A stretch of 63,405 nucleotides of DNA, filler included, from Octopus bimaculoides (lineage: Eukaryota): the NCBI RefSeq assembly GCF_001194135.2. It is 7 parts of 6 records of this genome, joined end to end, with 100 filler letters (N's around TTAATTAATTAA, not from the genome) between each part and the next. Parts side by side here need not be neighbours in the genome. Positions count along the whole stretch, not along the records: positions 1 to 29,408 come from NC_068981.1; 6 more parts are not named here. The stretch is one strand, 5' to 3'. A program made the position numbers and the translations under genes. Positions 2,620-28,559 of this stretch are shown in pieces; position 1 is the stretch's first letter, and each line of letters opens with the position of its first letter. The notes under the pieces were generated by a model. The model made no database searches. It was given only the letters and a program-made list of their open reading frames with translations, and was not told where the DNA came from.

Positions 2620-3710
2620 TGCACTATGGCTCACCTATCGGTTACAAACAAGACCCCAAAACCCAGTTACCAGACTCACCTTAAGTAATCTAGATTTTGA
2701 GTTGGTGATAATAGCAATGACTGTTGCTGATCTAGATCTATCAATAATGATTCAATACAACAGTAATTATGAAAGCATATCAGATATACACAAGTGAAAA
2801 TTACCTACATTCCCATAATACAAAAATAGATATATGAAAATCCCTTTAATTTAATTTCGATATATTAAATAATAAGTTTAGAATATAATCACTTTATAAC
2901 AATGCCTTTTCTGGACAGCCTTACTACATGCCTTCAGGTCTGCACATAGAGACACAGCCAAAAATGACTTTATTCTTTCCCCAATAAAATTAGATGTGTA
3001 TATCTGAAGCATATAACACATTAAAAAATGAACTAGCCTGATTAAATAATTAGCTAAAAAGCAAAAGGAAAGCAACTAAAAAGAAATTAGCAAAAAAAAA
3101 AAAAAAAAAAAAAAAAAGCAGAAATCAAGTAAGGCTGAAAGAGAAAATAATAAAAGTTAAAATTACTTAAGTGCAATGCCTTTTCTGAACAGCCTTACTA
3201 CATGACTTCAGTACTGCCCATAGACACACAGCTAGAAATGTTTATATTCTATCAAGTGAATTTGGAATTTTTTAAAGAAAATAAAGATAAAATAAAGCTA
3301 TTTGTTTATTCAAATTTATTTTCTTGCAATTATTAATAAGTTATATGCATTTTTATAAGCAAAAAATTATTGATTTCATAACAAGGAACAACAACTACAA
3401 TATAATCATCGTTTTGAATTTGCAACATGGCTCACCAAACAATAACAAATTGCAAGACCCAAGATTTTCAGTGATTAGGCTCACCTTAAGTCACGTAGAT
3501 TTTGAGTTGATGAAAATAATAATAACTGTCGCTCAGTGAAATGAAAATAAACACTTTTGTTATGTAATAAATTTAATTAACAATGGTCAATGACATATAA
3601 TTTATTAAAGCATATAAATGGCTTCATTGCTAATAAATTTAAAATTAAAATTAAAAATAATATAAAATATAATCACTTAAAATTGTACCTTTTCTGAACA
3701 GCCCTACTAC
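2620..3710. repeat. Diverged local tandem duplications containing candidate 15-nt microexons
   Basis: GCCTTTTCTG.ACAGCC.TACTAC at ~2904, ~3178, ~3688; CTCACCTTAAGT...AGATTTTGAGTTG at ~2675 and ~3480. Confidence 0.6.
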
Positions 3711-5221
3711 CAGAACTAGAGGAGAAGTTTCAGGTGTGGGAGCAAGGTCTAGAATCAAAGGGCCTTAGAGTCAATCTAGCGAAAACCAAAGTCTTAATAA
3801 GTAGGAAGACAGACAAATCACAAATCCCTTCCGGTAGATGGCTCTGCTCAATCTGTAGAAAAGGCGTAGGTAGAAACTCCATAAGATGTAAGCTATGGAC
3901 ACATAAGAGGGGCAGCAATATCAAAGGGAGGCTAACTGGGAAGATAGTTTTTGTATGTGGCAAATGCTCAGGCGCTATAAACACAGAAAATGTGCAGTGA
4001 ACAGCTTGTCACATTCCAGGGAGAAAAACTAGTAGTAGTTGATAGCTTCTGTTACCAAGGGGACCAAGTCAGTAGCAGGGGTGGATGCGCTGAAAGTGTA
4101 GCTGCCAGAATAATAATAGCCTGGGCAAAGTTCACAGAGCTCCTACATCTGCTGGTGACAAAGGGCCTCTTGCTCAGAGTAAAAGGTAGACTGTATAACG
4201 CATGTGTGCAAACAGCCATGCTACATGGCAACGAAACATGGGCCATGACTGCTGAGGACATGCGTAAGCATGCAAGGAATGAAGCCAGTATGCTCCGCTG
4301 GATGTGTGATGTCAGTGTGCATACCCGACAGAGTGTAAGTACCTTGAAAGAAAAGTTGGATTAAAGAAGCATCAGATGTGGTGTGCAAGAGAGACAACTG
4401 CGCTGGTATGGTCATGTGTTGTGTATGGATGAGGACAGCTGTGTGAAAAAGTGTCACATCCTAGCAGTAGAGGGAACCTGTGGAAGAGGTAGTCCCAGGA
4501 AGACATATGATGAGGTTGTGAAACACAACCTTTGAACGTTGGGCCTCACTGAGGCAATATAAAGGAACCAAGACCTTTGGAGATATGCTGTGCTTGAGAA
4601 GACTTGGCAAGCCAAATGAGACCATAACTGGCCCATTTAAGAGTACCTTTCAATCATTGGGCAATAAATTGCGTTTGCAAAGCCCTGTTGAGTCAAGTGA
4701 AGTCATTGTGGTGGACGATGGCAGTACCGCCTGATTGGTACCCGTACCGATGGCATGTAAAAAGCGCTATTCAGGCATGGTCGATGCCAGTGCTGGTGGC
4801 ATGTAAAAAGCACCATTCAAGCATGATTGTTGCCAGTGCCATCCGACTAGCTCCCATGCCGGTGGCATGTAAAAAGTACCATTTGAGTGTGGTCGATGCC
4901 TGTCCTGGTGGCACGTAAAAAGCACCATTCAAACCTGGTCATTACCAGTGCTGCCTGACTGGCTCCCATGCAGGTGGCATATAAAAAGCACCATTCAAGC
5001 GTGGTTGATGCCAGTACCACCTTACCGGCCCTCATGCTGGTTGGACGTAAAAAGTACCCACTATACTCTCAGAGTGGTTGGTGTTAGGAAGGGCATCCAG
5101 CTGTAGAAACTTTTCCAGATCAGATTGGAGCCTGGTGCAGCCTTCTGGCTTGCCAGCTTGCAATCAAACCATCCAACCCATGCCAGGATGGAAAGCGGAT
5201 GTTAAACGACGATGATGATGA
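3711..5221 (+). mobile_element. 5'-truncated RTE LINE: RT C-terminal region, Cys/His finger, repeated 3' UTR, (GAT)n tail
   Basis: GLRVNLAKTKV, LHGNETW and LRWYGHV motifs with frameshifts; same family as 25150-26025. Confidence 0.9.
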
Positions 5222-6934: not shown

Positions 6935-6996
<62 letters not shown>

Positions 6997-7151
6997 CAAC
7001 AACAACAACATCAAAAAATACCTTAGAAATGAGAACCCAGGTTCGAAATTTCTCCAAGACACCTGATGAAGGCTGGAGGGTATATCAGCCGAAACGTTGT
7101 GTTAACAACAAACAAGATGAGGACAAATATCCGTCAAATGTAAATAATGTA
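6861..7151 (+). mobile_element. tRNA-derived SINE-like element with (AAT)n spacer and hammerhead-bearing 3' part
   Basis: A box TGGCGTAGTGGTT (6870), B box GAGTTCGATTCC (6913); related tail sequences recur at ~10577-10614 (minus) and 57041-57239. Confidence 0.75.
7058..7103 (+). ncRNA. Minimal type-I hammerhead ribozyme motif
   Basis: Stem I GACAC/GTGTT; core CTGATGA; extra A; stem II GGCTG/CAGCC; GAA; palindromic stem III ACGT; predicted cleavage after GUU at 7098. Confidence 0.75.
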
Positions 7152-9637
7152 TATAGATAGATAGATAGATACAACGGGCTTCTTTCAGTTTCTGTCTACC
7201 ATATCCACTCACAAGGCTTTGGTCGGCCCAAGGTTACAGTGGAGGATTCTTGCCCAAGGTGCCACACAGTGGGACTGAACCTGGAACCATGTGGTTGGGA
7301 AGTAAGCTTCTTACCACACAGCCACTCCTGTGCCTATTATGTTAATGTTTTTTATTATTTCGGAATGAAGAACATAAATATGGATGCTGAGTAACTAAAC
7401 TTGTAGTATTTTGATGGGATTAAGCCAATGAATTAAGCAAGGTAATTGCTTCTATCAGAATCGTTTGCCTTTAAAATGAAAAAAATAAAACTGACGTATA
7501 GGACAGATATGTAAAATATATTCCTGTATGCTTCTTTCTCTGTTCATGCGGTTTAGCTGTGGAAATTGTTGCATGCGCGCACACACAAACACGAAAATTC
7601 TCCAGCCATTTAGCTGTTATTTTTACCATATCAAGAGCTTCACATGGCGTGATCCTTTTGCTGTTTCACTATAAATCTATGCATGCAGAAACAGACAAAA
7701 CAGTCGTTCATTTTCACTTTTAGATAGCAAGATGGGGTGGCAAGAGTGATTTAATTCTGGAGTTTTGCATAAAAATTTTGAAATTTAAATTTGTCTCCCA
7801 ACCCATATTCTTAATTTCTGTATTTTTTCATCGTAAATTGAAAAAAAAAAAAAAAATTTGAAAAATTGAAAAATTGAAACTTGGGAGAATGGAATTAAAT
7901 TTTTGAAAACATGGTTTTTTACACATTCTGAATCTCTGTCATCAAAAGAATAGGAATCTGGTGAAAAAAAAAAAATCGCTTTTGTGACTGGGTGCTAAAC
8001 TAGATCCTGGAAGTTATGAGGGGGAAAAAATGGATGGTGTGAATTTTCCAACAGTCCTCTACCCATNNNNNNNNNNNNNNNNNNNNNNNNNNNNNNNNNN
8101 NNNNNNNNNNNNNNNNNNNNNNNNNNNNNNNNNNNNNNNNNNNNNNNNNNNNNNNNNNNNNNNNNNNNNNNNNNNNNNNNNNNNNNNNNNNNNNNNNNNN
8201 NNNNNNNNNNNNNNNNNNNNNNNNNNNNNNNNNNNNNNNNNNNNNNNNNNNNNNNNNNNNNNNNNNNNNNNNNNNNNNNNNNNNNNNNNNNNNNNNNNNN
8301 NNNNNNNNNNNNNNNNNNNNNNNNNNNNNNNNNNNNNNNNNNNNNNNNNNNNNNNNNNNNNNNNNNNNNNNNNNNNNNNNNNNNNNNNNNNNNNNNNNNN
8401 NNNNNNNNNNNNNNNNNNNNNNNNNNNNNNNNNNNNNNNNNNNNNNNNNNNNNNNNNNNNNNNNNNNNNNNNNNNNNNNNNNNNNNNNNNNNNNNNNNNN
8501 NNNNNNNNNNNNNNNNNNNNNNNNNNNNNNNNNNNNNNNNNNNNNNNNNNNNNNNNNNNNNNNNNNNNNNNNNNNNNNNNNNNNNNNNNNNNNNNNNNNN
8601 NNNNNNNNNNNNNNNNNNNNNNNNNNNNNNNNNNNNNNNNNNNNNNNNNNNNNNNNNNNNNNNNNNNNNNNNNNNNNNNNNNNNNNNNNNNNNNNNNNNN
8701 NNNNNNNNNNNNNNNNNNGATATATATATTGGCGAAGTCTTTCCCGGTATTTCTATAAAATTTCACCAATATATATATCCATTTTCCTGAAAGTCATGGG
8801 GAGAAAATCAGATCTTGTGAATTTTCCATAAGTCCTCTCTCACCACACCCTCCATGTTCGTTTGCGCAATTGTTTTTTTCATATTCATTCTCTACAGCTT
8901 TTAACACCTAGCAGGCTGGCTTTATTATTTTTTTTGGCGTTAACAGGTCTCACTTTATATTCATCATCATCATCATCATATTGACCGTAATTTCTTACGT
9001 TTATCCAACATGTACAACTTCGTTATTCCTATTAGCAAATGAAACGTGCATAATGGTGAATAAATAATATCAAAAGACTTCCATTTTCCCATTTTGCTAT
9101 ATAATTCCAGTTTTCGCCAAATTTGGTGAAAATCTGTTCAATACACCGCCACAAATTTTTCACAAAATTTGGCAAAAATACTCATAACCCTAACTCTAAA
9201 AGCTGAACCCTAACCCTAAAACCCTAAAGCTAAAACCAGTACAAACGCATGAACGATGTCATAAATAACAGTACCACCGATAGTTGTTATTGACAAACAA
9301 CAGCACTAATTTTATTACACCGCATAACGTTTTGTTGACAATTCACAGCAGTAATTGTTTTCACCTCAATAGACATCAGTGATTGGTTGAAATTACCAAA
9401 ATACGACAATTTTAACACGAAATAACTTTAAAAAGATAATATTTTCTCAATAACACTAAGAGTAAAAGATGTTTTATATGACACATTCTACCAGTGTCCC
9501 AAGTTTGAAAGTGTTTCGTTAAGAAAACAAGTGGCGCCCGCCAAATCAGAAAGATCCAACACAGGTATAATAATATTTATTATTATTATTCATCAAAAAG
9601 TAATGCTTCAAATCGTTCCCAAAATTTTTCGGTATAA

Positions 9638-12717: not shown

Positions 12718-13432
12718 CTACCTTCCATAACAAATATTCAAAAGCCCACAACAAAATGGATGAAACATTGTGCCACAGCACCATTTATTTCCAGGCTTAA
12801 GGAAGGCCCAAGTGCATTCCTCTTGTTGAGTGCTGTTAATAACATTTAAATCAATCTCCACAGATGTAAACTTGGTGGTACTTTGGTACTGGTCTCCAGA
12901 GTGGCTATAGTGCACAGTTGTCTCCCTTGCACAAGTACACTGAATGGTTGAATTCTGTTTCAAGAATCCCATATAACTTCTCATAGCTTTCTTTTGGAAT
13001 TTTCAGAAAATGTTTACAAATTTTCTCTCTACACATGGGAAGTTATATGACAATGAAAAAAATTTTTGTAATTTTTCAATATTTAAAAAAAATTTTTTTT
13101 TTTTTAATTTTTTTGAAGTTTTACAAAAATCATAGTTTAAAATAGAGACTGATTTTTCAACTTAAATCCCAGCAATGGATCATTAAATGTGTTTATGGGA
13201 AGAAAGATATTAAACAGAATGATAAATAAATGAGGACAGTATTTGGTGGTCGTGAGATGCGCTGAAAATATCAGCACAGAATCACACAAAATTTTATTTA
13301 TGTTTTGTTTTTCCATAATTGTATGAATTCCAGTGTGTAGAATACAAATTTGCAAAGATATTTCTGAATATTCCAAAGAATAAAGTAAGATATGAGGAGT
13401 TATATGGGATTCTTAAAGCAGAATTCTGCCAA
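12718..13432 (-). pseudogene. Probable paralogous Ig-like exon split by a MITE (reconstructed WQNSTIQCTCARETTVHYSHSGDQYQSTTKFTSVEIDLNVINSTQQEECTWAF...)
   Basis: Removing the insert between GAATTCTG direct repeats (12950-12957, 13421-13428) restores an open frame after the acceptor ttttacttattcag; shares W, TCA, H.G, ST, N.T.Q and TW.F motifs with exon 4 (by-eye alignment). Confidence 0.45.
12955..13421. mobile_element. MITE with ~110-bp TIRs inserted in the Ig-like pseudo-exon (solo arm at ~11790-11900)
   Basis: CTGTTTCAAGAATCCC / GGGATTCTTAAAGCAG ends; flanking duplication (AATT, or GAATTCTG depending on boundary choice). Confidence 0.75.
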
Positions 13433-13544: not shown

Positions 13545-14305
13545 GACTAATAGTATATTTATTTCATTATTTCATATGCCTTTAACCCCCCAACGCGGAG
13601 TATAGGCCACTTATAATTGAATTCCATGTCACATAATTTTTCACTTCTGTACTTATACTCTTCCGTGAATGTTCCCCTTTCTCTAGCACTTTTTGTGTTG
13701 ATTTACGCCACGAGTTCTTAGGCCTACCCCTCTTTCTATATCCATCCGGATTCCACTGTAAAGCACTTTTCCCTACATTTGGTGTGTCTTTTATAATAGT
13801 GCTACCAATCTACTTCCACATTTTCTTAAATATTTGCTCCCTAATCGAAACTTGATTTGTTCTTTGCCATAGTTCCATATTGCTTATGTGTTCGGGCCAT
13901 CTAATTTTAAGTATACTACATAAGCATCTGTTGATGAATGATTGTATTTGCTTATTTGACTTAACAGTTGTTCGCCATGTCTCAGCCCCATACAATAACA
14001 CCACTTTTACGTAAGTGTTAAAAATTCTTATTTTGTTCTTTATTGAAATTACACTCGCATCGTCTTAGAGCAAAGCGCAGAGTGGAATGCACCGCTTTAT
14101 ATTAATTTTATTGACTTCGAAAAAGCATTCGATAGTGTAGATAGGAAAGGCTTATGGAAAATTATGCAGCACTACGGCATACCAGACAAGTATATATCTA
14201 TAATAAGAGCAACTTACCAAGGAATGTCATGTCAAGTCTTGCATGAAAACGGAGCTACGGACAAATTCGAAGTAAAAACAGGAGTTCGACAGGACTATTA
14301 GTATA
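13545..14305 (-). mobile_element. RTE/BovB-like LINE insertion with 5' inversion and 13-bp TSD
   Basis: Minus 13560-14054 encodes the C-terminus (VLLYGAETW...RGRP); plus 14051-14293 encodes the RT core (RIVLEQ...FIDFEKAFDSVDR...GVRQ); flanks GACTAATAGTATA and GACTATTAGTATA. Confidence 0.85.
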
Positions 14306-15340: not shown

Positions 15341-15849
15341 ACATATTTGACAACCTCAACATTTTATGTAAACTGAGGAAAAAAATTAGGTGAAAGGGGT
15401 TAAAAAGTCACATAGAAAGTATAATTCCAATTTGGGTACCAAACATTAAAACCAACTAAAATTGGGTAAAATCGATAGTTATTAACCCCCAATGTAATTA
15501 AACAAGTATAAAAACAGGAAACATAAAATGGACACAAAACCTAATAAATTTCTTGAAATAATTGATCTTAAATGCAATTTTTTTGTGGTGGGGGTATTTA
15601 GCTTATTTTATGGGGGTAAAAATCTGATTAGGAAGATCAGATTCTGCCGAAATTGAAGAAGGGCCATAACACAAGATAACAAAAAGAAAATATTCCCAAC
15701 AAATCCCTGGATTGAAACTTTACCATAGTCTACCCCCAACCCCGCAAAAAAAGGAAAAAATACAATGCAAACCAGAATCATTTGCACTAAATTGTGAAAA
15801 CTGATCATTTATTATTCACAACAAATATTTTAAGAGAAAGGTAACATTC

Positions 15850-16010
15850 TTATACTACATCCAGTGGATTGTGGTTAACACAAGTTTTGATCAAACTGAC
15901 AAAGAAGGTTATGAAAAGGATGACTACAAGGCCAAGTATGGAAGGGATTACTATGGGATAGATGGGTATGCTGGTTATATATAATTTAAAAAAATTTATT
16001 CAATATTTCT
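15850..16010 (-). pseudogene. Duplicated TM exon 5b: alternative terminal exon or pseudo-exon (KKY* then INFFKLYITSIPIYPIVIPSILGLVVILFITFFVSLIKTCVNHNPLDVV*)
   Basis: Strong acceptor tttttttcttgtttttcttag; phase 1 is in frame with a TM paralogous to 5a; TGA at 16002-16000; AATAAA at 15813-15808. Confidence 0.6.
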
Positions 16011-16136
16011 CTAAGAAAAACAAGAAAAAAATCCCAAAACATAGCATTCTTATACCATAACTGGTGGATTCTGGTATTTCTCATGAGATATCCACTGGAT
16101 GACACAGTGATAGATGGGTATTCGAATGTAATGATG

Positions 16137-16249
16137 CTATATGACAAAGATTATGAAAAGGATGGCTACAAATTCGAGTATGGAAAGAATGACTATGGGT
16201 ATGCTGGTTCCTGATCCATTAGCTTCGAAAACTGTTGTTGGTTCTTCAT
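16137..16249 (-). CDS. Ig-like membrane protein gene, terminal exon 5a: stalk plus TM ((N)EEPTTVFEANGSGTSIPIVILSILEFVAILFIIFVI*)
   Basis: gttttcttgttcatcttttgcag|ATGAAG; phase 1; ~21-aa hydrophobic helix then TAG at 16139-16137; AATAAA at 16000-15995. Confidence 0.8.
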
Positions 16250-16592
16250 CTGCAAAAGATGAACAAGAAAACATATACTTTTTGTTTTTAATAAAAGATA
16301 TTTATATCAACCAGGCTGAACCATTTTGATACCAGCCTGCTCAAAACTACTTTTGTTTCTATTGTACAAATTCCCTGTTCTAAAGAGATCTAAAGTAAAA
16401 CCTTCCATCAAAGCTTCAAATAAACTTGTGTTCCAAACACTAACTTAATAATGACAAGGTTATTTCTCTAAATTCTTTATAACTTGTCAATCTACTTCAT
16501 TTTTGGTAATATTTTATAGGATTGAGGAAACTTCTCCAGTAGGTATACAGAAGCATAAAAAAAGAAGAGTGCCATTGTTATCAAGTGAACGA

Positions 16593-16649
<57 letters not shown>

Positions 16650-17209
16650 CAATTAGGTGACAAGCTGGCTGAACCATTAGCTTGTCAAGCAAAATGCTAA
16701 GAGGCATTTCACCCATGTTTACGATCTGAGTTCAAATTCCGTTGGTGACACCTTCACTTGTCATCCTTCTGCGGTCAATGAAATAAGGACTAGTTGAGCA
16801 CTAGAGTCGATGTAATTGATTTAACTCCCTTCCCCGAAATTGCTGGCGTTGTGCCAAAATCTGAAACCATTATTATTAATTCCAAGTTGGGTGAAAGTTA
16901 TGAACATGGCAAGAGTGGATGATCTCACTCTGAGTGTAGACCTGTGAGTTGGAGAGTAGGAATTGAAGGGGACAGATGCCCTTGGTGTTCAAGGAGATCT
17001 TGGATGGTGAAATTCCTTGGTTATCCCTAGATACAACACTGTCATCTCTTTCTTTTTTCTTGTATTGTTGTATACTTCCCTTCTTTGTTTATTGTAAACC
17101 GTGTATATATTTTATTATCATTCCATAACATGTAAACTCCCTACACTTTATGTCTATCATTGTATTGTCCCCTCATCCTTAGCCTGTGTAGCAAATAAAG
17201 GAAACCATG

Positions 17210-17279
17210 ATCATCATCATCATTGTTTAACATTGGATATTTCTATCATTTTTTCCTTTGATAAAGGTAGCTTTTGCAC

Positions 17280-17320
<41 letters not shown>

Positions 17321-17370
17321 CCACCACCACCACCATCATCACCACCACCACCACCATCATCACCACCACT

Positions 17371-17429
<59 letters not shown>

Positions 17430-17440
17430 TATTATTATTA
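17210..17440. repeat. Compound (CAT/CAC/TAT)n microsatellite; similar tracts at 51920-52040, 58860-59060, and (AT)n, (GATA)n, (GT)n, (ATGT)n throughout 45860-61800
   Basis: Direct reading; these tracts explain the poly-I/M/D/H and YI/CV/HT ORFs. Confidence 0.95.
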
Positions 17441-17709
17441 GGGTGGTGAGCTGGCAGAATTGTTAGTGTGCCAGACGGAAAGCTTAGCAAAATTTCGCCC
17501 GTCTCTCTGTTCTGAGTTCAAATTCCACCGAGGTCAACTTTGCCTTTCATCCCTTCAGGGTTAATAAAATAAGTACCAGTTGAGTACTGGAGTCAATGTA
17601 ATTGACTCATCCCCTCCCCACAAATTGCTGCCATTGTGGCAAAATTTGAAACCATTATTATTATCATTATCATCATCATTATTATTATTATTATAAATCA
17701 TTTCCTTAC

Positions 17710-17958
17710 TGTTTCTCTCCAAATGAATTCTTCCACCGTTGACGTTATTGTCCTCGAAGTCCCAAGTCAAACATTGCTTAGTCACATTTCGGATGAAAAT
17801 AGTGGACATATTTCCATTATGCGTAACTTTTATATTTTTGTCTTCAGCGCATGTCAAGTCACATTCGTATTTAGCTGTTTTACATTTCCACCCCAAGGGT
17901 CTCATCATGTTTGGAATGTTTATAGAGAGGGTGACATCTCTTCCAAGTACAACATTTT
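17710..17958 (-). CDS. Ig-like membrane protein gene, exon 4: atypical Ig-like domain ((E)NVVLGRDVTLSINIPNMMRPLGWKCKTAKYECDLTCAEDKNIKVTHNGNMSTIFIRNVTKQCLTWDFEDNNVNGGRIHLERN)
   Basis: gatttctttatttcag|AAAATG...AAACA|gtaagg; 249 nt, phase 1 to 1, as typical for Ig-domain exons; Ig-like strand motifs V.LG.DVTL, a C-strand Trp and STIFIRNVT; sequons NMS and NVT. Confidence 0.88.
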
Positions 17959-18898: not shown

Positions 18899-18937
18899 CA
18901 CTTTGGATAATTTCATAACGTTTTGCTCTTGAGAAAC
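18899..18937 (-). CDS. Ig-like membrane protein gene, exon 3 ((C)FSRAKRYEIIQS)
   Basis: tttcttttcatctttttttcag|GTTTCTC...CAAAGTG|gtaaat; 39 nt, phase 1 to 1, open in the phase required by exons 2 and 4; completes the signal peptide (FSRA). Confidence 0.8.
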
Positions 18938-22140: not shown

Positions 22141-22186
22141 AAAAACACAATGCAAACCAAGAGAGCAAATTTCGAAGGTCCATGAT
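22141..22186 (-). CDS. Ig-like membrane protein gene, exon 2 (IMDLRNLLSWFALCF, signal peptide)
   Basis: ttatttttcag|ATCATGGAC...TGTTTTT|gtaagt; 46 nt, phase 0 to 1; hydrophobic signal-peptide-like sequence. Confidence 0.8.
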
Positions 22187-22502
22187 CTGAAAAATAATTT
22201 TGAAAGCATGAAAACTGACAGCCAGATCATGACTGATATAAGAAACTTTAAATATCTATTTTCACAATATTGTTAGCATGCCAGACAAAATGCCTATGAC
22301 TTGTGGAAATATAAGGCGTTTTTAAAAATTATTATTTTTTTTTTTACAAAAGGCTTCCCCCTAACTATTTTGAAGTTCATGGTGCAAAATAAAATCCAAA
22401 TGCAGCTACGGAAGAACACTTCAAGCAAGCCAGCAATCAGCTTCCAGCCATTGTTACTGTCTACCGCCATGTTTGGATTCCTCACATGAGAAAGAAACTT
22501 AC

Positions 22503-22517
22503 CAATTCACCTGCCAT
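22503..22517 (-). CDS. Ig-like membrane protein gene, first coding exon (MAGEL); the exon may extend upstream to 22530
   Basis: Minus strand reads AAAAATGGCAGGTGAATTG|gtaagt: good Kozak context and a consensus phase-0 donor, in frame with the next exon. A pyrimidine tract plus AG at 22532-22531 suggests an upstream non-coding exon. The Met at 22183 is an alternative start. Confidence 0.55.
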
Positions 22518-22629
22518 TTTTGGATACCTTCTTAAACAAGAAAAAAGAAAATTTTTCAGCGGACTGCAACACAGGTTTAGTGACTAAGAAAAAAAAAAAT
22601 TTGCATTTTATGTGCCAGTTTTGTGACTC

Positions 22630-23180
22630 TAACAGTATCCGACCTCTCTCCTCCAAAGTCGATGCAGTTCAACGCATCTCACCTACTGAAAGCAAATACT
22701 AAAAGAGATGTTCCTATCACTCTATCTGCCAAAGCATTATCTTCTTTTGAGGCAATTAAGAAGGAAATAGCTTCTGTTCCCTTGCTTGCACATCCGGCTC
22801 CTGATACTCATCTCTCTTTAATAGTTGATGCATTGGATTCTGCGGTTGGTGCTGTTTTGCAACATACTGCCAACAATCAAACTCAGCCTTTGGAATTTTT
22901 TCTCATCAATTACAGCCAGCTGATTGTTGTTACAGTACGCTTGATCGTGACCTCTTAGCGATCTACCTGTCAATTCGTCACTTTCAACATCAACTCGAGG
23001 TCCAGGATTTTGTTATTTATACTGATCACAAGCCTCTTACGTTTGCTCTGTCATCCAAATCGGACAAACACTCACCTCGTGCTCTTTGTCACCTGGACTA
23101 CATTTTCCAGTTCACAAGTGACATTCGGCATATACCTGAAACAGAGAATGTGCCTGCTGATACACTCTCTCGTATCCCTG
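22630..23180 (+). mobile_element. Ty3/Gypsy RT-connection/RNase H fragment
   Basis: PLLAHPAP...LIVDALDSAVGAVLQ...DRDLLAIYLSIRHF...YTDHKPL...ENVPADTLSR with frameshifts. Confidence 0.85.
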
Positions 23181-25149
23181 TATGTTATCTTTCATCTCCT
23201 GCTGCAATCGATTTAACTGCCATTGCGCATTGGGTGTTAATCCAGTCCTAACAGTGGCATGTGTGGGTCTCACAGGTCTGGAGGCCAAGCCTACAGATAA
23301 ATACCAAGGCGAAGGGTGTTGTTATCAAACTGAGAGTGAGTCGTGGGTGAATACACGATGGAATAGCAATTATTTCGTCTTAGTTTTCACTGCTTATAAT
23401 AAGCACATGACATTTTTATCTTACGATAGGGAACATCATCTCCTCAGCCTAGGGAAGTTATCTTTTGAAGTCGGCGTGATGGGAAAGAATTGATGTCTGT
23501 GTGTGTGTGTGTGCGTGTGTGTGTTTTATGGCATTGTGCGAGACAGAAAGTGTGGTGTGTATGTAAAATTGTTTTGTTAGTGTGTGTGAAGAGACAGAGA
23601 GAGCAATGTGCTGGTGTGTGTGTGTGTGAGAGAGAGAGACAGAGAGACAGAAAGAGAGAGAACTGAAATTTTTTTTATTCACTTGTAGTGAGTGAATGTG
23701 TGAGTGATTGACAGAGAAAAAAAAGAGAGAGAGAGATTAGTGAGGTTTAAGCCTAGGAAGTTTCACCCACTGCCAACATTTTACAGAAATAAAATTTCCA
23801 GAGTGAATTACATGGTTCATTATTAAATATATATATATATATCGTGTATATTTGGTGTATATATATACATATATATAATAGCATGTATGTAGACAGGTAA
23901 AAATTCAGACAAACTGGTACGTCAAAAAAATGGATTAATTCTCAGCAAAACACTTTTTTATGCTAGACAAGTCAAGCTTTTTTTTTTCATATTCATTTAG
24001 AGCAAGTTGTTTTACACCTATTACACTATTTTTCTTTTGTTTTTGTGCTCGGGTCAAACACTTTAATTTAAACGCATTGGTTATTTTCTGAGCCCTCTTC
24101 CCCATTTGTCAGCGCGCACTTTCTTCCTCATATTGCTTTAAAACACAGTGCATTACAACTATTACACATTTTGGTTTTCTGAAATTGAAATTGTGAAGTT
24201 GCGATTTTTGCAAATTCATTTTTTTCAGAATTGAAATCTCCATAGCCTAAAACGTGGGATTCCCTAAAAACAAAAAACAAAAAAAAATTAAGAAGCGAAG
24301 GGTTCCATATACGACTGCTAGGACGACAACCACCGATTGTCTGCCTGAAGGATATGTATCGCACCACCGATACCTTTTTTTTATTAATAGTTTAACAAGT
24401 TGGTTAAAAAAATCCCCTTACTTTAAAAGAGTTTGTAGGTGATAGGGCCACCATCCTTGGGTAACCCTATCCTGTACAATCAATTTTCTTTAACGAAGAA
24501 AACAAAAACACTGAATGAATTGAAAAACAGCATAACAGATATCTATTACAAGTTACTCAGCCTTACATCTTGGGGTAACGGATTTGCCAGGTAACCCTTT
24601 ATGGTTGGTGTGAAGATGGCGTCGGTGTAGTTGTGTGGTTGGTTAAGTTATTCTTCACTGTCTCCGTAGTAGACTGTTTTGACTCAAGGTAGAGTTGACA
24701 GAGCGGCTCTTAGAGATGTCTGGTTCCCTCAAACGTTTAGCAGCTAAGAGGTCGAGAAAAGGTGGAAATGCTTGGATACTGGATAACTACACATGTGCAT
24801 AAGAGACTTTCCACATTCCTTCTGGAAGACATGTCCCTGTGCATGCATGGACAAACTCTCCAAAATGGCGACTGGTATCAGGCGCCACAACAAGTTAAGT
24901 AACAGCTCTAATGTTTTTGGAATGAATTGAATTTGGAAATCAGTATGTGTCTTCTAGTCAGCTTCTCTGATTTAGTCTGAATATGTTTGTTCAACCAATA
25001 TACTTCATTCACTTAAAGCATTAGAAGTGCCTTACATGAGAGATGGAGTGAAAAGTAATGGGAGTAGAGTAGAGTATAATACTACACTAAGATGATTAGT
25101 TGAAGAGAATGGCGTATATATAAATGAAATTAACGTATAGTAGTAGTAG

Positions 25150-26025
25150 TGGGGGTGGGTGCGCTGAAAGTGTAGCTGCTAGAATAAGAATAGCCTGGGC
25201 AAAGTTTAGAGAGCTCTTACCCCTGCTGGCGACAAAGGGACTCTCACTCAGAGTAAAAGGCAGACTGTATGACGCATGCGTACGAACAACCATGCTACAT
25301 GGCAGTGAAACATGGGCTGTAACTGCTGAGGACATACGTAAGCTCGCAAGGAATGAAGCCAGTATGCTCCGTTGGATGTGTAATGTCAATGTGAATACCC
25401 GTCAGAGTGTAAGTATCTTGAGAGAAAAGCTGAACATTAGAAGCATCAGTTGTGGCGTGCAAGAGAGACGATTGCGCTGGTATGGACATGTGGTGAGAAT
25501 GGAGGAGGATANNNNNNNNNNNNNNNNNNNNNNNNNNNNNNNNNNNNNNNNNNNNNNNNNNNNNNNNNNNNNNNNNNNNNNNNNNNNNNNNNNNNNNNNN
25601 NNNNNNNNNNNNNNNNNNNNNNNNNNNNNNNNNNNNNNNNNNNNNNNNNNNNNNNNNNNNNNNNNNNNNNNNNNNNNNNNNNNNNNNNNNNNNNNNNNNN
25701 NNNNNNTCTTGAGCGTGGCCGTTGCCAGTACCGCCTGACTGGCTCCTGTAGGATTTTCGAGCGAGATCGTTGCCAGTGCCCCTGGACTGGCTTGTGCGGG
25801 TGGCACATAAAAGACACCATTTCGAGCGTGGCCGTTTTCGTGCGGGTGACACGTAAAAGCACCCACTACACTCTCTGAGTGGTTGGCGTTAGGAAGGGCA
25901 TCCAGCTGTAGAAACTCTGCCAAATCAGACTGGAGCCTGGTGTTGCCATCCGGTTTCACCAGTCCTCAGTCAAATCGTCCAACCCATGCTAGCATGGAAA
26001 GCGGACGTTAAACGATGATGATGAT
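25150..26025 (+). mobile_element. 5'-truncated RTE LINE, gap inside
   Basis: KGRLYDACVRTTMLHGSETW...RLRWYGHVVRM followed by the same 3' UTR and (GAT)n tail. Confidence 0.9.
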
Positions 26026-27919: not shown

Positions 27920-28559
27920 CATCTAACTAGTTATCTATCTATCTATCTATCTATCTATCTGTCTATCTATCTATCTATCTATCTATCTACTTTTTATTTG
28001 TTTCAGACGATTGCGGTCATGTTGGGGCACCGCTCTGTGGGGGTTTAGTCAAATAAATCAATCCCAGGACTCGTATTTTGAAGCCTAGTTAGTACTAATT
28101 CTAGTGTCCTCTTTCGCTGTGCCGCTAAGTTACAGGGACGAAAACACACCAACACCGATTGTCAAGGGGTGGTGGGGGGCAAACACAGACATATATATAT
28201 ATATATATGTGTGTGTTATTTTATTCAATCATTTGACTGTGGCCATGCTAGAGCACCGTCTTTAGTCGAAAAAATCGACCTGCAGAATGTAACCCTAGTA
28301 CTTATTCTATGGGTCTTTTTTTGACAAACTGCTAAGTTATGGTGACATAAGCACACCAACATCAGGTGTCAACCGATGGTGGGTAGGAGGACAAACACAG
28401 ACACAAAAATATATGTATTTATACATGCAAGAGTGGCTGTGTGGTAAATAGCTTGCTTCCCAACCACACGGTTCTGGGTTCAGTCCCACTGCATGGCATC
28501 TTGGGCAAGTGTCTTCTACTATAGTCTCGGGCTGACCAAAGNNNNNNNNNNTTCCCCAC

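What the first reader, a model, noticed from the sequence alone, without database searches (positions are those of the whole stretch)
16050..16139. TAG directly after the TM is followed by an in-frame 28-aa tail: candidate A-to-I stop-recoding switch
Reading through ATA-TAG-CAT gives HHYIRIPIYHCVIQWISHEKYQNPPVMV*. It ends at a TAA that aligns with the stop of the duplicated exon 5b (NPPVMV* versus NPLDVV*). UAG is the preferred ADAR triplet, and editing (plus-strand position 16138) gives UGG = Trp, a typical membrane-interface residue. The tail has two YxxPhi motifs (YIRI, YHCV) and a hydrophobic C-terminus. Coleoid cephalopods are known for extensive A-to-I recoding, so editing or read-through could toggle a tail-less receptor to a signalling one. 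This is inference. Alternatives are a plain TGG>TAG nonsense allele, or a lost donor (5a GTCA|tatagc versus 5b GTCA|gtttga) with chance openness of 28 codons.
Basis: partly seen in the sequence, partly recalled or inferred. Interest (0 to 1): 0.72.

Follow-up and report, generated by a model that had tools for sequence, protein, structure and literature searches.

The report
Stop codon truncating an octopus receptor tail
In a small, fast-evolving octopus immunoglobulin-like membrane protein gene, a TAG stop sits where the sister species has a tryptophan codon and cuts off a once-coding 28-residue cytoplasmic tail; this is most likely an ordinary tail-truncating mutation, and RNA editing back to tryptophan is possible but has no supporting evidence here.

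Summary
On the minus strand, TAG (16139-16137) directly follows a 21-residue hydrophobic segment. Then come 28 sense codons and a TAA (16052-16050).

The gene is Octopus bimaculoides LOC106881157, a 147/153-aa protein with a signal peptide, one Ig-like domain and a TM. Both NCBI models end at this TAG.

Twenty-eight open codons alone are not unusual (P about 0.14). However, the read-through frame is homologous to real cytoplasmic tails:
- O. vulgaris paralog: 11/28 identities, ungapped, same stop position, permutation p about 1e-4.
- Two exon copies in the syntenic O. sinensis ortholog.

This rules out the "lost donor / chance openness" alternative. In the best alignment, TAG lies opposite TGG (Trp) in the closest O. 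sinensis exon copy.

Other evidence favours a decaying relic:
- Excess lineage-specific change after the TAG (14 versus 3, p = 0.013).
- Tail omega about 1.2.
- Loss of conserved and basic residues.
- No double-stranded RNA around the site.
- Tail-less relatives exist.

No RNA data could be reached, so editing is untested. Best reading: a lineage-specific stop gain that leaves a tail-less receptor. Interest is low to moderate.

The parts
16137..16139 (-). TAG stop codon (A at 16138), the annotated end of LOC106881157. It corresponds to CM046601.1:108,264,766 in GCA_001194135.2.
   Evidence: It aligns opposite TGG in O. sinensis exon copy S2. S1 has TTG and P0012 has Tyr in that column.
16053..16136 (-). 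28 in-frame sense codons (HHYIRIPIYHCVIQWISHEKYQNPPVMV). This is a relic of, or a potential, cytoplasmic tail that now lies in the 3' UTR.
   Evidence: Homologous to P0012, S1 and S2 tails. Relative-rate excess 14 versus 3. Omega 1.18.
16050..16052 (-). TAA, the ancestral stop of the tail. It is positionally conserved with the stops of 5b, S1, S2 and P0012.
16140..16249 (-). It has a phase-1 acceptor and encodes the stalk (EEPTTVFEANGSGTS) and a 21-residue hydrophobic segment (16140-16202).
   Evidence: Kyte-Doolittle 19-residue maximum 3.23.
16109..16121 (-). 13-nt stretch ATACCCATCTATC inside the tail, identical to the start of the 5b TM (15957-15969). It lies within an O. bimaculoides-specific 6-nt insertion that replaces the conserved I-[KR]-x-x-V-N segment.
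15850..15975 (-). 5b: a partial tandem duplicate (TM, shortened tail, TAA). It has no in-frame acceptor reachable from the phase-1 donor of the Ig exon, so it is a pseudo-exon.
   Evidence: The acceptor frames were read directly from the sequence.
17710..17958 (-). Ig-like domain exon (phase 1-1).
   Evidence: Pfam I-set hit in family members. AF2 beta-sandwich model and Foldseek Ig hits.
18899..18937 (-). Small coding exon (FSRAKRYEIIQS).
22141..22183 (-). First coding exon of isoform X2 (MDLRNLLSWFALCF, signal peptide). The alternative MAGEL start of isoform X1 is near 22500-22517.
15995..16000 (-). AATAAA poly(A) signal about 50 nt after the TAA. A second one lies at 15808-15813, after 5b.

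Best explanation
The TAG is a genuine stop codon that arose in the O. bimaculoides lineage. The most economical route is a 6-nt deletion of the juxtamembrane Phe-Lys codons plus a single-base change of TGG (or TTG/TAY) to TAG.

The stop truncates an ancestral cytoplasmic tail of about 28-30 residues in a small Ig-like type I membrane protein. The protein made is tail-less and ends with its hydrophobic segment. By inference only, that C-terminus also resembles a GPI-attachment signal.

The 28 downstream codons are a recent relic now carried in the 3' UTR. They are still open because too little time has passed, not because they are translated.

Shown: the homology of the tail, a sense codon in the ortholog, and excess change in the tail. 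Inferred: the order of mutations, that the stop is fixed, and the anchoring mode.
For: - Both NCBI protein isoforms end at this TAG.
- The tail is homologous to real tails. This holds for O. vulgaris P0012 and for O. sinensis exon copies S1 and S2 in the syntenic ortholog L003. The open frame is therefore inherited rather than evidence of current translation.
- The O. sinensis copies carry sense codons at the site: TGG in S2 and TTG in S1.
- Nucleotide changes unique to O. bimaculoides after the TAG number 14, versus 3 unique to S2 (binomial p = 0.013). Before the TAG the counts are 9 versus 7.
- Amino-acid counts with the independent outgroup P0012 are 6 versus 1.
- Omega is 1.18 after the stop, 0.64 before it, and 0.37-0.47 in the Ig exon.
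- Residues conserved between S2 and P0012 are changed here: YIW, I[KR]xxVNEW, NEYQ, E at -1. Juxtamembrane K/R residues are lost.
- A neutral relic with 14-21 substitutions stays stop-free 36-46% of the time.
- 5b, which cannot be spliced in frame, also keeps a 41-codon open frame.
- Tail-less or nearly tail-less members exist. P0013 is a transcript with TAA right after its TM. P0019 has TM plus KKGQE and then TGA, with no relic tail.
- There is no RNA duplex at the site.
Against: - Both indels in the O. bimaculoides tail are multiples of three (-6 and +6 nt), and no second stop has arisen. If both indels post-date the TAG, this is mildly unlikely under neutrality (roughly 0.04-0.05 jointly).
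- The pre-stop versus post-stop contrast in the relative-rate test is not significant on its own (Fisher p = 0.14).
- All counts rest on 26-28 codons and on a hand-curated alignment around two indels.
- S1/S2 gene conversion in O. sinensis could bias the outgroup test.
- Only one individual's assembly was seen, so fixation is unknown.
- No RNA data were examined, so editing is not excluded.
Confidence: 0.72

Rival explanations
1. Restorative stop-loss A-to-I editing. ADAR deaminates the A of UAG in some tissues, giving UGG (Trp), the residue encoded in the O. sinensis S2 copy. A fraction of transcripts would then encode a receptor with a 29-residue tail. This would act either as a regulated switch or as a 'harm-permitting' rescue that allowed the G>A change to persist.
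For: - The U-A-G context fits the established ADAR 5'-U / 3'-G preference (own knowledge).
- The aligned orthologous codon is TGG.
- The tail frame is intact, with two in-frame indels and the ancestral stop retained.
- UAG>UGG stop-loss events are a recognised class in coleoid transcriptomes (PMC8382921) and in other animals. One example is Drosophila DopEcR, TAG=>TGG at level 0.72 (PMC9989829 supplement).
- The harm-permitting model for G>A changes in coleoids is described in PMC6881472.
Against: - A local 301-nt fold is no more stable than shuffles (z = 0.03).
- The best long-range duplex for the site across the pre-mRNA (-33.7 kcal/mol, with an intronic microsatellite) is within the range of shuffles and other native windows.
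- In the spliced mRNA the A sits in a 4-bp helix with pairing probability 0.4-0.6.
- The tail shows accelerated, non-conservative change and omega about 1.2.
- The column is variable across relatives (W, L, Y), so Trp is not specifically required.
- No protein with the extended C-terminus exists in the 5.8-billion-protein collection, which includes Logan assemblies (one search found only the NCBI models).
- Most coleoid editing is low-level and neural (PMC6881472), and this gene's expression site is unknown.
Confidence: 0.1
2. The TAG is not the species' normal state. It would be a private or polymorphic nonsense allele, or a base error in the single reference individual, and most animals would carry a sense codon (such as TGG) and make the tailed protein.
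For: - Only one assembly lineage was available. The window is identical to GCA_001194135.2. The older and newer NCBI protein accessions are identical, which by my knowledge reflects re-scaffolding of the same contigs.
- The tail is still fully open and in frame.
Against: - The tail has already accumulated many lineage-specific, non-conservative changes and lost its basic juxtamembrane residues. That is easier to explain if constraint was lifted some time ago.
- There is nothing positive in favour of a base error.
Confidence: 0.12
3. Programmed translational read-through of UAG produces a small amount of the C-terminally extended protein.
For: The base after the stop is C (UAG-C), generally the leakiest +4 context (own knowledge). 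The extension is open and ends at a conserved stop.
Against: - The downstream hexamer CAUCAU does not fit the UAG read-through consensus CARYYA / CA(A/G)N(U/C/G)A (own knowledge, sequence read).
- There is no stable downstream structure.
- There is no coding-type conservation of the extension (omega 1.18).
Confidence: 0.03

Closest known systems
UAG>UGG stop-loss A-to-I recoding sites in animals (coleoid 'editable stop codons', PMC8382921; Drosophila DopEcR TAG=>TGG, PMC9989829 supplement)
   Same: UAG in the ADAR-favoured context, with an in-frame extension behind it. In DopEcR the gene is likewise a membrane receptor whose C-terminus would be extended.
   Different: Those sites are defined by observed RNA-DNA differences. 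Here there is no RNA evidence and no predicted duplex, and the extension looks relaxed rather than conserved.
Restorative editing of premature stop codons in fungal 'pseudogenes' (Fusarium PUK1, PMC4817773; PMC10776026), and the harm-permitting model in coleoids (PMC6881472)
   Same: A G>A nonsense change at an ancestral Trp codon that editing could reverse. The ortholog carries TGG.
   Different: The fungal system is ADAR-independent, stage-specific and experimentally shown. Here the ancestral state is ambiguous (W, L or Y in relatives), and the truncation removes only a short, labile tail.
Receptor pairs that differ by a tail-truncating stop, such as human FcgammaRIIIA (TM, tailed) versus FcgammaRIIIB (shortened C-terminus, GPI-linked) (own knowledge)
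   Same: An Ig-superfamily ectodomain. A stop gain shortens the C-terminus, so the protein ends in or just after its hydrophobic segment. Small residues (N-G-S-G) lie upstream, which could serve as a GPI omega region.
   Different: GPI anchoring is not tested here. The octopus case involves one gene and a relic tail, not two expressed paralogs.
Octopus-restricted family of Ig-like repeat membrane proteins (uncharacterized LOC genes of O. bimaculoides, O. sinensis and O. vulgaris found)
   Same: The same ~105-aa domain (PNMKRPVVWKC..YKYECDRTC...STLWIR.VT..CLTW.F.D), stalk, TM and short variable tail. Exon order and phases are shared.
   Different: This member has one domain and no tail. The O. 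sinensis ortholog has two domains and two intact terminal-exon copies.

Membership tests
ADAR stop-loss (UAG>UGG) recoding site | A in genomic DNA but G (inosine) in cDNA of the same individual | not testable with these tools
   No RNA-seq reads are available. Protein look-ups found only the NCBI genome models.
ADAR stop-loss (UAG>UGG) recoding site | The edited A lies in an extended, imperfect double-stranded RNA | tested here: not met
   Local fold z = 0.03. The duplex scan over 8 kb of pre-mRNA is no better than shuffles or native controls. In the mRNA fold the site sits in a 4-bp helix. Prediction only, so this is not decisive.
ADAR stop-loss (UAG>UGG) recoding site | Favoured neighbours (5' U or A, not G; 3' G) | tested here: met
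   The sequence is AUA-UAG-CAU.
ADAR stop-loss (UAG>UGG) recoding site | The downstream extension is maintained as coding sequence | tested here: inconclusive
   The extension is homologous to real tails and still open with in-frame indels. Against this, there is a lineage-specific excess of change (14 versus 3) and omega 1.18.
Programmed stop-codon read-through | Leaky stop context or stimulatory downstream element | tested here: not met
   Only the +4 C fits. CAUCAU does not match CARYYA. There is no stable 3' structure.
Nonsense truncation with a relic ORF | Sense codon at the homologous position in the ortholog or paralogs | tested here: met
   TGG in S2, TTG in S1 and Tyr in P0012.
Nonsense truncation with a relic ORF | The sequence after the stop is homologous to coding sequence and shows relaxed constraint | tested here: met
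   Homology p about 1e-4. Relative-rate p = 0.013 after the stop versus 0.8 before it. Omega 1.18 versus 0.64 and 0.4. The numbers are small.
Ig-superfamily type I membrane protein | Ig-like beta-sandwich ectodomain | tested here: inconclusive
   The Pfam I-set model passes its cut-off only in relative P0044 (35.5 bits) and is sub-threshold in the others. This protein itself gives no Pfam hit. The AF2 model is an all-beta domain with pLDDT about 75-82. The Foldseek top hits are all Ig domains but weak (E >= 4.6e-3, TM 0.36-0.48).
Ig-superfamily type I membrane protein | N-terminal signal peptide and a single C-terminal TM | tested here: met
   There is a hydrophobic N-terminus (MDLRNLLSWFALCFCFS), a predicted helix at residues 3-17, and a C-terminal helix at 135-146. 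KD 3.23. No dedicated signal-peptide predictor was run.
GPI-anchored protein | A C-terminal signal: small omega/omega+2 residues, a short spacer, then a 15-20-residue hydrophobic end with no cytoplasmic residues | tested here: inconclusive
   By eye the pattern is A-N-G-S-G, then T-S-I-P, then a 19-residue hydrophobic stretch ending at the stop. No GPI predictor or assay was available.

The most novel reading that the evidence does not exclude
The UAG is a restorative stop-loss editing site. In ADAR-rich tissue a substantial fraction of LOC106881157 mRNA would be recoded to UGG, toggling a tail-less (possibly GPI-type) Ig-like receptor to a transmembrane form with a 29-residue tail. The tail carries a juxtamembrane YxxPhi and a hydrophobic C-terminal x-Phi-x-Phi end. 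The G>A change would have been tolerated because of that editing.
Probability: 0.07. Interest if true: 0.6.

Novelty: new member of a known kind. Interest (0 to 1): 0.3.

Why it matters
If the plain reading holds, this is a tidy example of how a lineage-specific, rapidly evolving octopus Ig-like receptor family changes its membrane anchoring and signalling capacity. The changes come through exon duplication, decay and a single stop gain. The finding is useful for annotation but not surprising.

If the minority reading holds, it would be a concrete, easily assayed case of editing reversing a nonsense change at an ancestral Trp codon in a coleoid. That bears directly on the adaptive versus harm-permitting debate about cephalopod recoding. 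Published coleoid editomes built on Swiss-Prot-anchored ORFs would have missed this orphan gene.

Tried and rejected
**Lost splice donor with chance openness: rejected.**
- TM and tail are contiguous in one exon in O. sinensis S1 and S2 and in P0012.
- The GTCA|gtttga site in 5b is a deletion junction, not a donor.

**5b as an alternative coding terminal exon: rejected.**
- Every AG upstream of it gives a stop within 3-6 codons when joined to the phase-1 donor of the Ig exon (sequence reading).
- The T-rich similarity upstream of 5b is the common 3' flank of all the exon copies, not a duplicated acceptor.

**My first inference from the 5a/5b alignment: reversed.**
- I first read the extra 45 nt in 5a as an insertion.
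- Relatives show that the long tail is ancestral and that 5b carries the deletions.

**A 51-nt in-frame micro-intron that would remove the TAG (TTT|GTCATA...CATCCAG|TGG): considered and set aside.** The donor is weak (GTCATA) and the intron is very short.

**Other searches:**
- A second paralog in the window was sought by tblastn. Only 5b was found.
- DNA for P0012 and P0004 was not on record. P0031 worked instead.
- The alignment-based protein search returned only 6 family members and missed several of its own input sequences.
- Gene and protein identifiers were not found in the paper library.
- Other family loci (P0019, P0038) show no UAG-plus-conserved-tail pattern.

Full report
**Observation**

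- On the minus strand the terminal coding exon reads ...EANGSGTSIPIVILSILEFVAILFIIFVI, then TAG, then HHYIRIPIYHCVIQWISHEKYQNPPVMV, then TAA.
The tail occupies 16136-16053 and the TAA 16052-16050.
- The TAA and its 3' flank (TAAGAATG) align with the stop of the downstream partial duplicate 5b (15853-15975...NPLDVV*).
- With the local stop-codon frequency of 0.067, 28 open codons occur by chance with P = 0.14. Openness alone therefore means little.

**What the gene is**

- The exon belongs to Octopus bimaculoides LOC106881157. Isoform X2 is 147 aa (P0001) and X1 is 153 aa (P0002). Both end ...IIFVI at this TAG.
- The window is identical to GCA_001194135.2 chromosome CM046601.1. The site is at position 108,264,766.
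- Exact GT-AG exon coordinates on the minus strand are 22183-22141, 18937-18899, 17958-17710 (phase 1-1) and 16249-16137. AATAAA signals lie at 16000 and 15813.
- The product has a signal peptide, one ~85-residue all-beta domain, a short stalk and a 21-residue hydrophobic C-terminus.
- An exhaustive HMMER search found 29 representatives. All those whose source I looked up come from Octopus species.
- These relatives have one to four copies of the same domain, followed by a stalk, a TM and short, very variable tails.
- Pfam I-set passes its threshold in one relative and is sub-threshold in several.
- The AF2 model is a beta-sandwich of medium confidence, and every top Foldseek hit is an Ig domain, though weakly.
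- [quoted passage not shown] is a fair description.

**The tail is a real, inherited coding sequence**

- The O. vulgaris paralog P0012 ends ...VAILIISCIIFKYPPYIWIKTHVNEWISCNEYQLPPDEV*.
- BLASTP of the stalk, TM and read-through tail of the last exon (58 aa) against P0012 aligns 27/61 residues. The alignment runs straight through the stop position to both C-termini (E = 7e-10).
- The tail alone gives 11/28 identities ungapped. Permutation gives p about 1e-4 for score, and 0 of 200,000 shuffles reach that identity.
- I then obtained the DNA of the syntenic O. sinensis ortholog, LOC115229017 (L003).
  - Intron identity to the window is 82-90%.
  - It has two Ig exons and two complete terminal-exon copies.
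  - S1 reads ...ILWFKFKLPPYDWCRNRVTRRIPRNEPQNQQVEV*.
  - S2 reads ...IIFSVIFKWLLYIWIRNRVNEWISPNEYQNPPVEA*.
- S2 is the closest copy to our exon. Its upstream intron is 90.5% identical.
- In all of these, TM and tail are contiguous in one exon and stop at the same place. This rejects the "lost donor plus chance openness" alternative.
- It also reverses my first reading of the 5a/5b alignment. The long tail is ancestral, and 5b carries 21-nt and 24-nt deletions.

**The orthologous codon**

- The best pairwise alignment is:
  - ours: GTC ATA --- --- TAG CAT CAT TAC ATT CGA
  - S2: GTC ATA TTC AAG TGG CTT CTT TAC ATT TGG
- TAG therefore lies opposite Trp (TGG), after loss of the Phe-Lys codons.
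- S1 has TTG and P0012 has Tyr in that column. The position is a variable aromatic or hydrophobic juxtamembrane residue.
- TGG, TTG and TAY are each one step from TAG, so the ancestral state is not resolved.
- 5b has lost this codon.

**Is the tail still constrained?**

- With S1 as outgroup, nucleotide changes unique to O. bimaculoides versus unique to S2 are 9 versus 7 before the stop. After the stop they are 14 versus 3 (binomial p = 0.013).
- With P0012 as an independent protein outgroup, the post-stop counts are 6 versus 1. The pre/post contrast alone gives Fisher p = 0.14.
- Nei-Gojobori omega against S2 is 1.18 for the tail, 0.64 for stalk plus TM, and 0.37-0.47 for the Ig exon.
- The O. 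bimaculoides tail has lost residues shared by S2 and P0012:
  - W>R in YIW.
  - I[KR]xxVN replaced by IPIYHCVI, through a 6-nt insertion containing a 13-mer identical to the 5b TM start.
  - E>Q.
  - NE>EK.
  - E>M.
  - All but one juxtamembrane basic residue.
- Staying open is not informative. Simulated neutral decay with 14-21 substitutions leaves the frame stop-free 36-46% of the time.
- The unusable 5b also keeps a 41-codon frame.
- The only hint of maintenance is that both tail indels are in frame.

**Editing prerequisites**

- The U-A-G context fits the ADAR preference (established knowledge).
- No duplex was found:
  - A 301-nt local fold is no better than shuffles (z = 0.03).
  - The best partner anywhere in 8 kb of pre-mRNA is an intronic microsatellite at -33.7 kcal/mol. 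That is within the shuffled range (-29.7 +/- 3.3, minimum -38.5) and the native control range.
  - In the spliced mRNA the A sits in a 4-bp helix with pairing probability 0.4-0.6.
- No transcript-derived protein for this gene, edited or not, exists in the searched collections.
- Editing is therefore untested, not disproved.

**Family context**

- Tails are labile in this family.
- P0013, a transcript assembled from SRR3401912, stops with TAA immediately after its TM.
- The P0019 group has TM plus KKGQE and then TGA, with nothing tail-like downstream.
- The truncated C-terminus here has small residues (A-N-G-S-G), a short spacer, and 19 hydrophobic residues running to the stop. This also fits the general pattern of a GPI-attachment signal. 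That is inference only.

**Comparison with what is known**

- UAG>UGG stop-loss editing is an accepted class. Shoshan et al. merge coleoid ORFs across "editable stop codons" (PMC8382921).
- A genome-based metazoan editome lists TAG=>TGG sites, such as Drosophila DopEcR at level 0.72 (PMC9989829 supplement).
- Restorative editing of premature stops is established in fungi (PMC4817773, PMC10776026).
- The harm-permitting model describes G>A changes tolerated at edited sites in coleoids (PMC6881472).
- The coleoid ORF sets were anchored on Swiss-Prot similarity, so this orphan gene was probably never examined.

**Verdict**

- The feature is real, and the tail is genuinely ex-coding.
- The best-supported explanation is a lineage-specific stop gain that removed a short, evolutionarily labile cytoplasmic tail and left a decaying relic in the 3' UTR (confidence about 0.72).
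- Rival explanations:
  - Editing back to Trp is a legitimate, cheaply testable candidate (about 0.1 for detectable editing, less for a functional switch).
  - A reference-specific allele: about 0.12.
  - Translational read-through: about 0.03.
- This is a new instance of known kinds of event. Interest is low to moderate.

Noticed in passing
window 17710-17958 and 16053-16249, versus L003: The coding exons are more diverged from the O. sinensis ortholog than the flanking introns. The Ig exon is 72-73% identical (dS 0.64-0.73) and exon 5 has dS about 0.3-0.36, whereas the intron just upstream of exon 5a is 90.5% identical. This suggests exon-level gene conversion among paralogs and/or diversifying selection.
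   Followed up: partly
L003 15680-15892 and 16969-17133: The O. sinensis RefSeq model (P0031/P0004) splices at GAG|GTATAA. That uses the tail's own stop region as a donor and joins it to stalk-repeat DNA upstream of S2, read in another frame (QQWIRNQQSSKWIRKQQ...). The unspliced reading ends ...NQQVEV*. The annotated C-terminus looks like a modelling artefact.
   Followed up: partly
L003 16975-17135: In front of the S2 terminal-exon copy, the stalk has expanded into several ~27-nt repeats (GGATCAGGAAGCAGCAGATCAGCAAAT). A 1-nt difference puts the S2 TM out of frame with a phase-1 acceptor. This is either a real frameshift or a homopolymer assembly error.
   Followed up: no
L003 10928-11182 and 15047-15307: The O. 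sinensis ortholog has a lineage-specific tandem duplication of the small exon plus the Ig exon. The two domains are about 95% identical at nucleotide level (dS 0.064). O. bimaculoides has one domain.
   Followed up: partly
window 22584-23248 (+), 14047-14298 (+), 13813-14064 (-), 3698-4361 (+), 25124-25735 (+): Retroelement fragments are present. An LTR-type RT/RNase H fragment lies just upstream of the gene's first exons (PF17917, 46.9 bits). An RVT_1 fragment and a DUF6451 fragment lie downstream in opposite orientation. Two related ORF fragments at 3.7-4.4 kb and 25.1-25.7 kb gave no Pfam hit.
   Followed up: partly
window 12721-13002 (-): A 94-codon open frame is rich in Cys (…NSTIQCTCARETT…QEECTW…CCGTMFHPFCCG). 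It has a weak Shisa_N match (E = 0.006, below cut-off). It may be an exon of a neighbouring gene or a chance frame.
   Followed up: no
window 17230-17460, 16590-16650, 6940-7000: There are long tri-nucleotide microsatellites ((ATC/ATG)n and (AAT)n) in the introns. The 17.3-kb one is the best, but non-specific, predicted pairing partner of the TAG region. Assembly gaps (runs of N) lie at 8067-8718, 25512-25706 and 28542-28551.
   Followed up: no
L001 (Logan SRR3401912 contig), 245-661: This is a transcript of another family member (P0013, 138 aa). It ends with TAA right after its hydrophobic segment, so a tail-less form is expressed naturally in this family. The species of the run was not determined.
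   Followed up: partly
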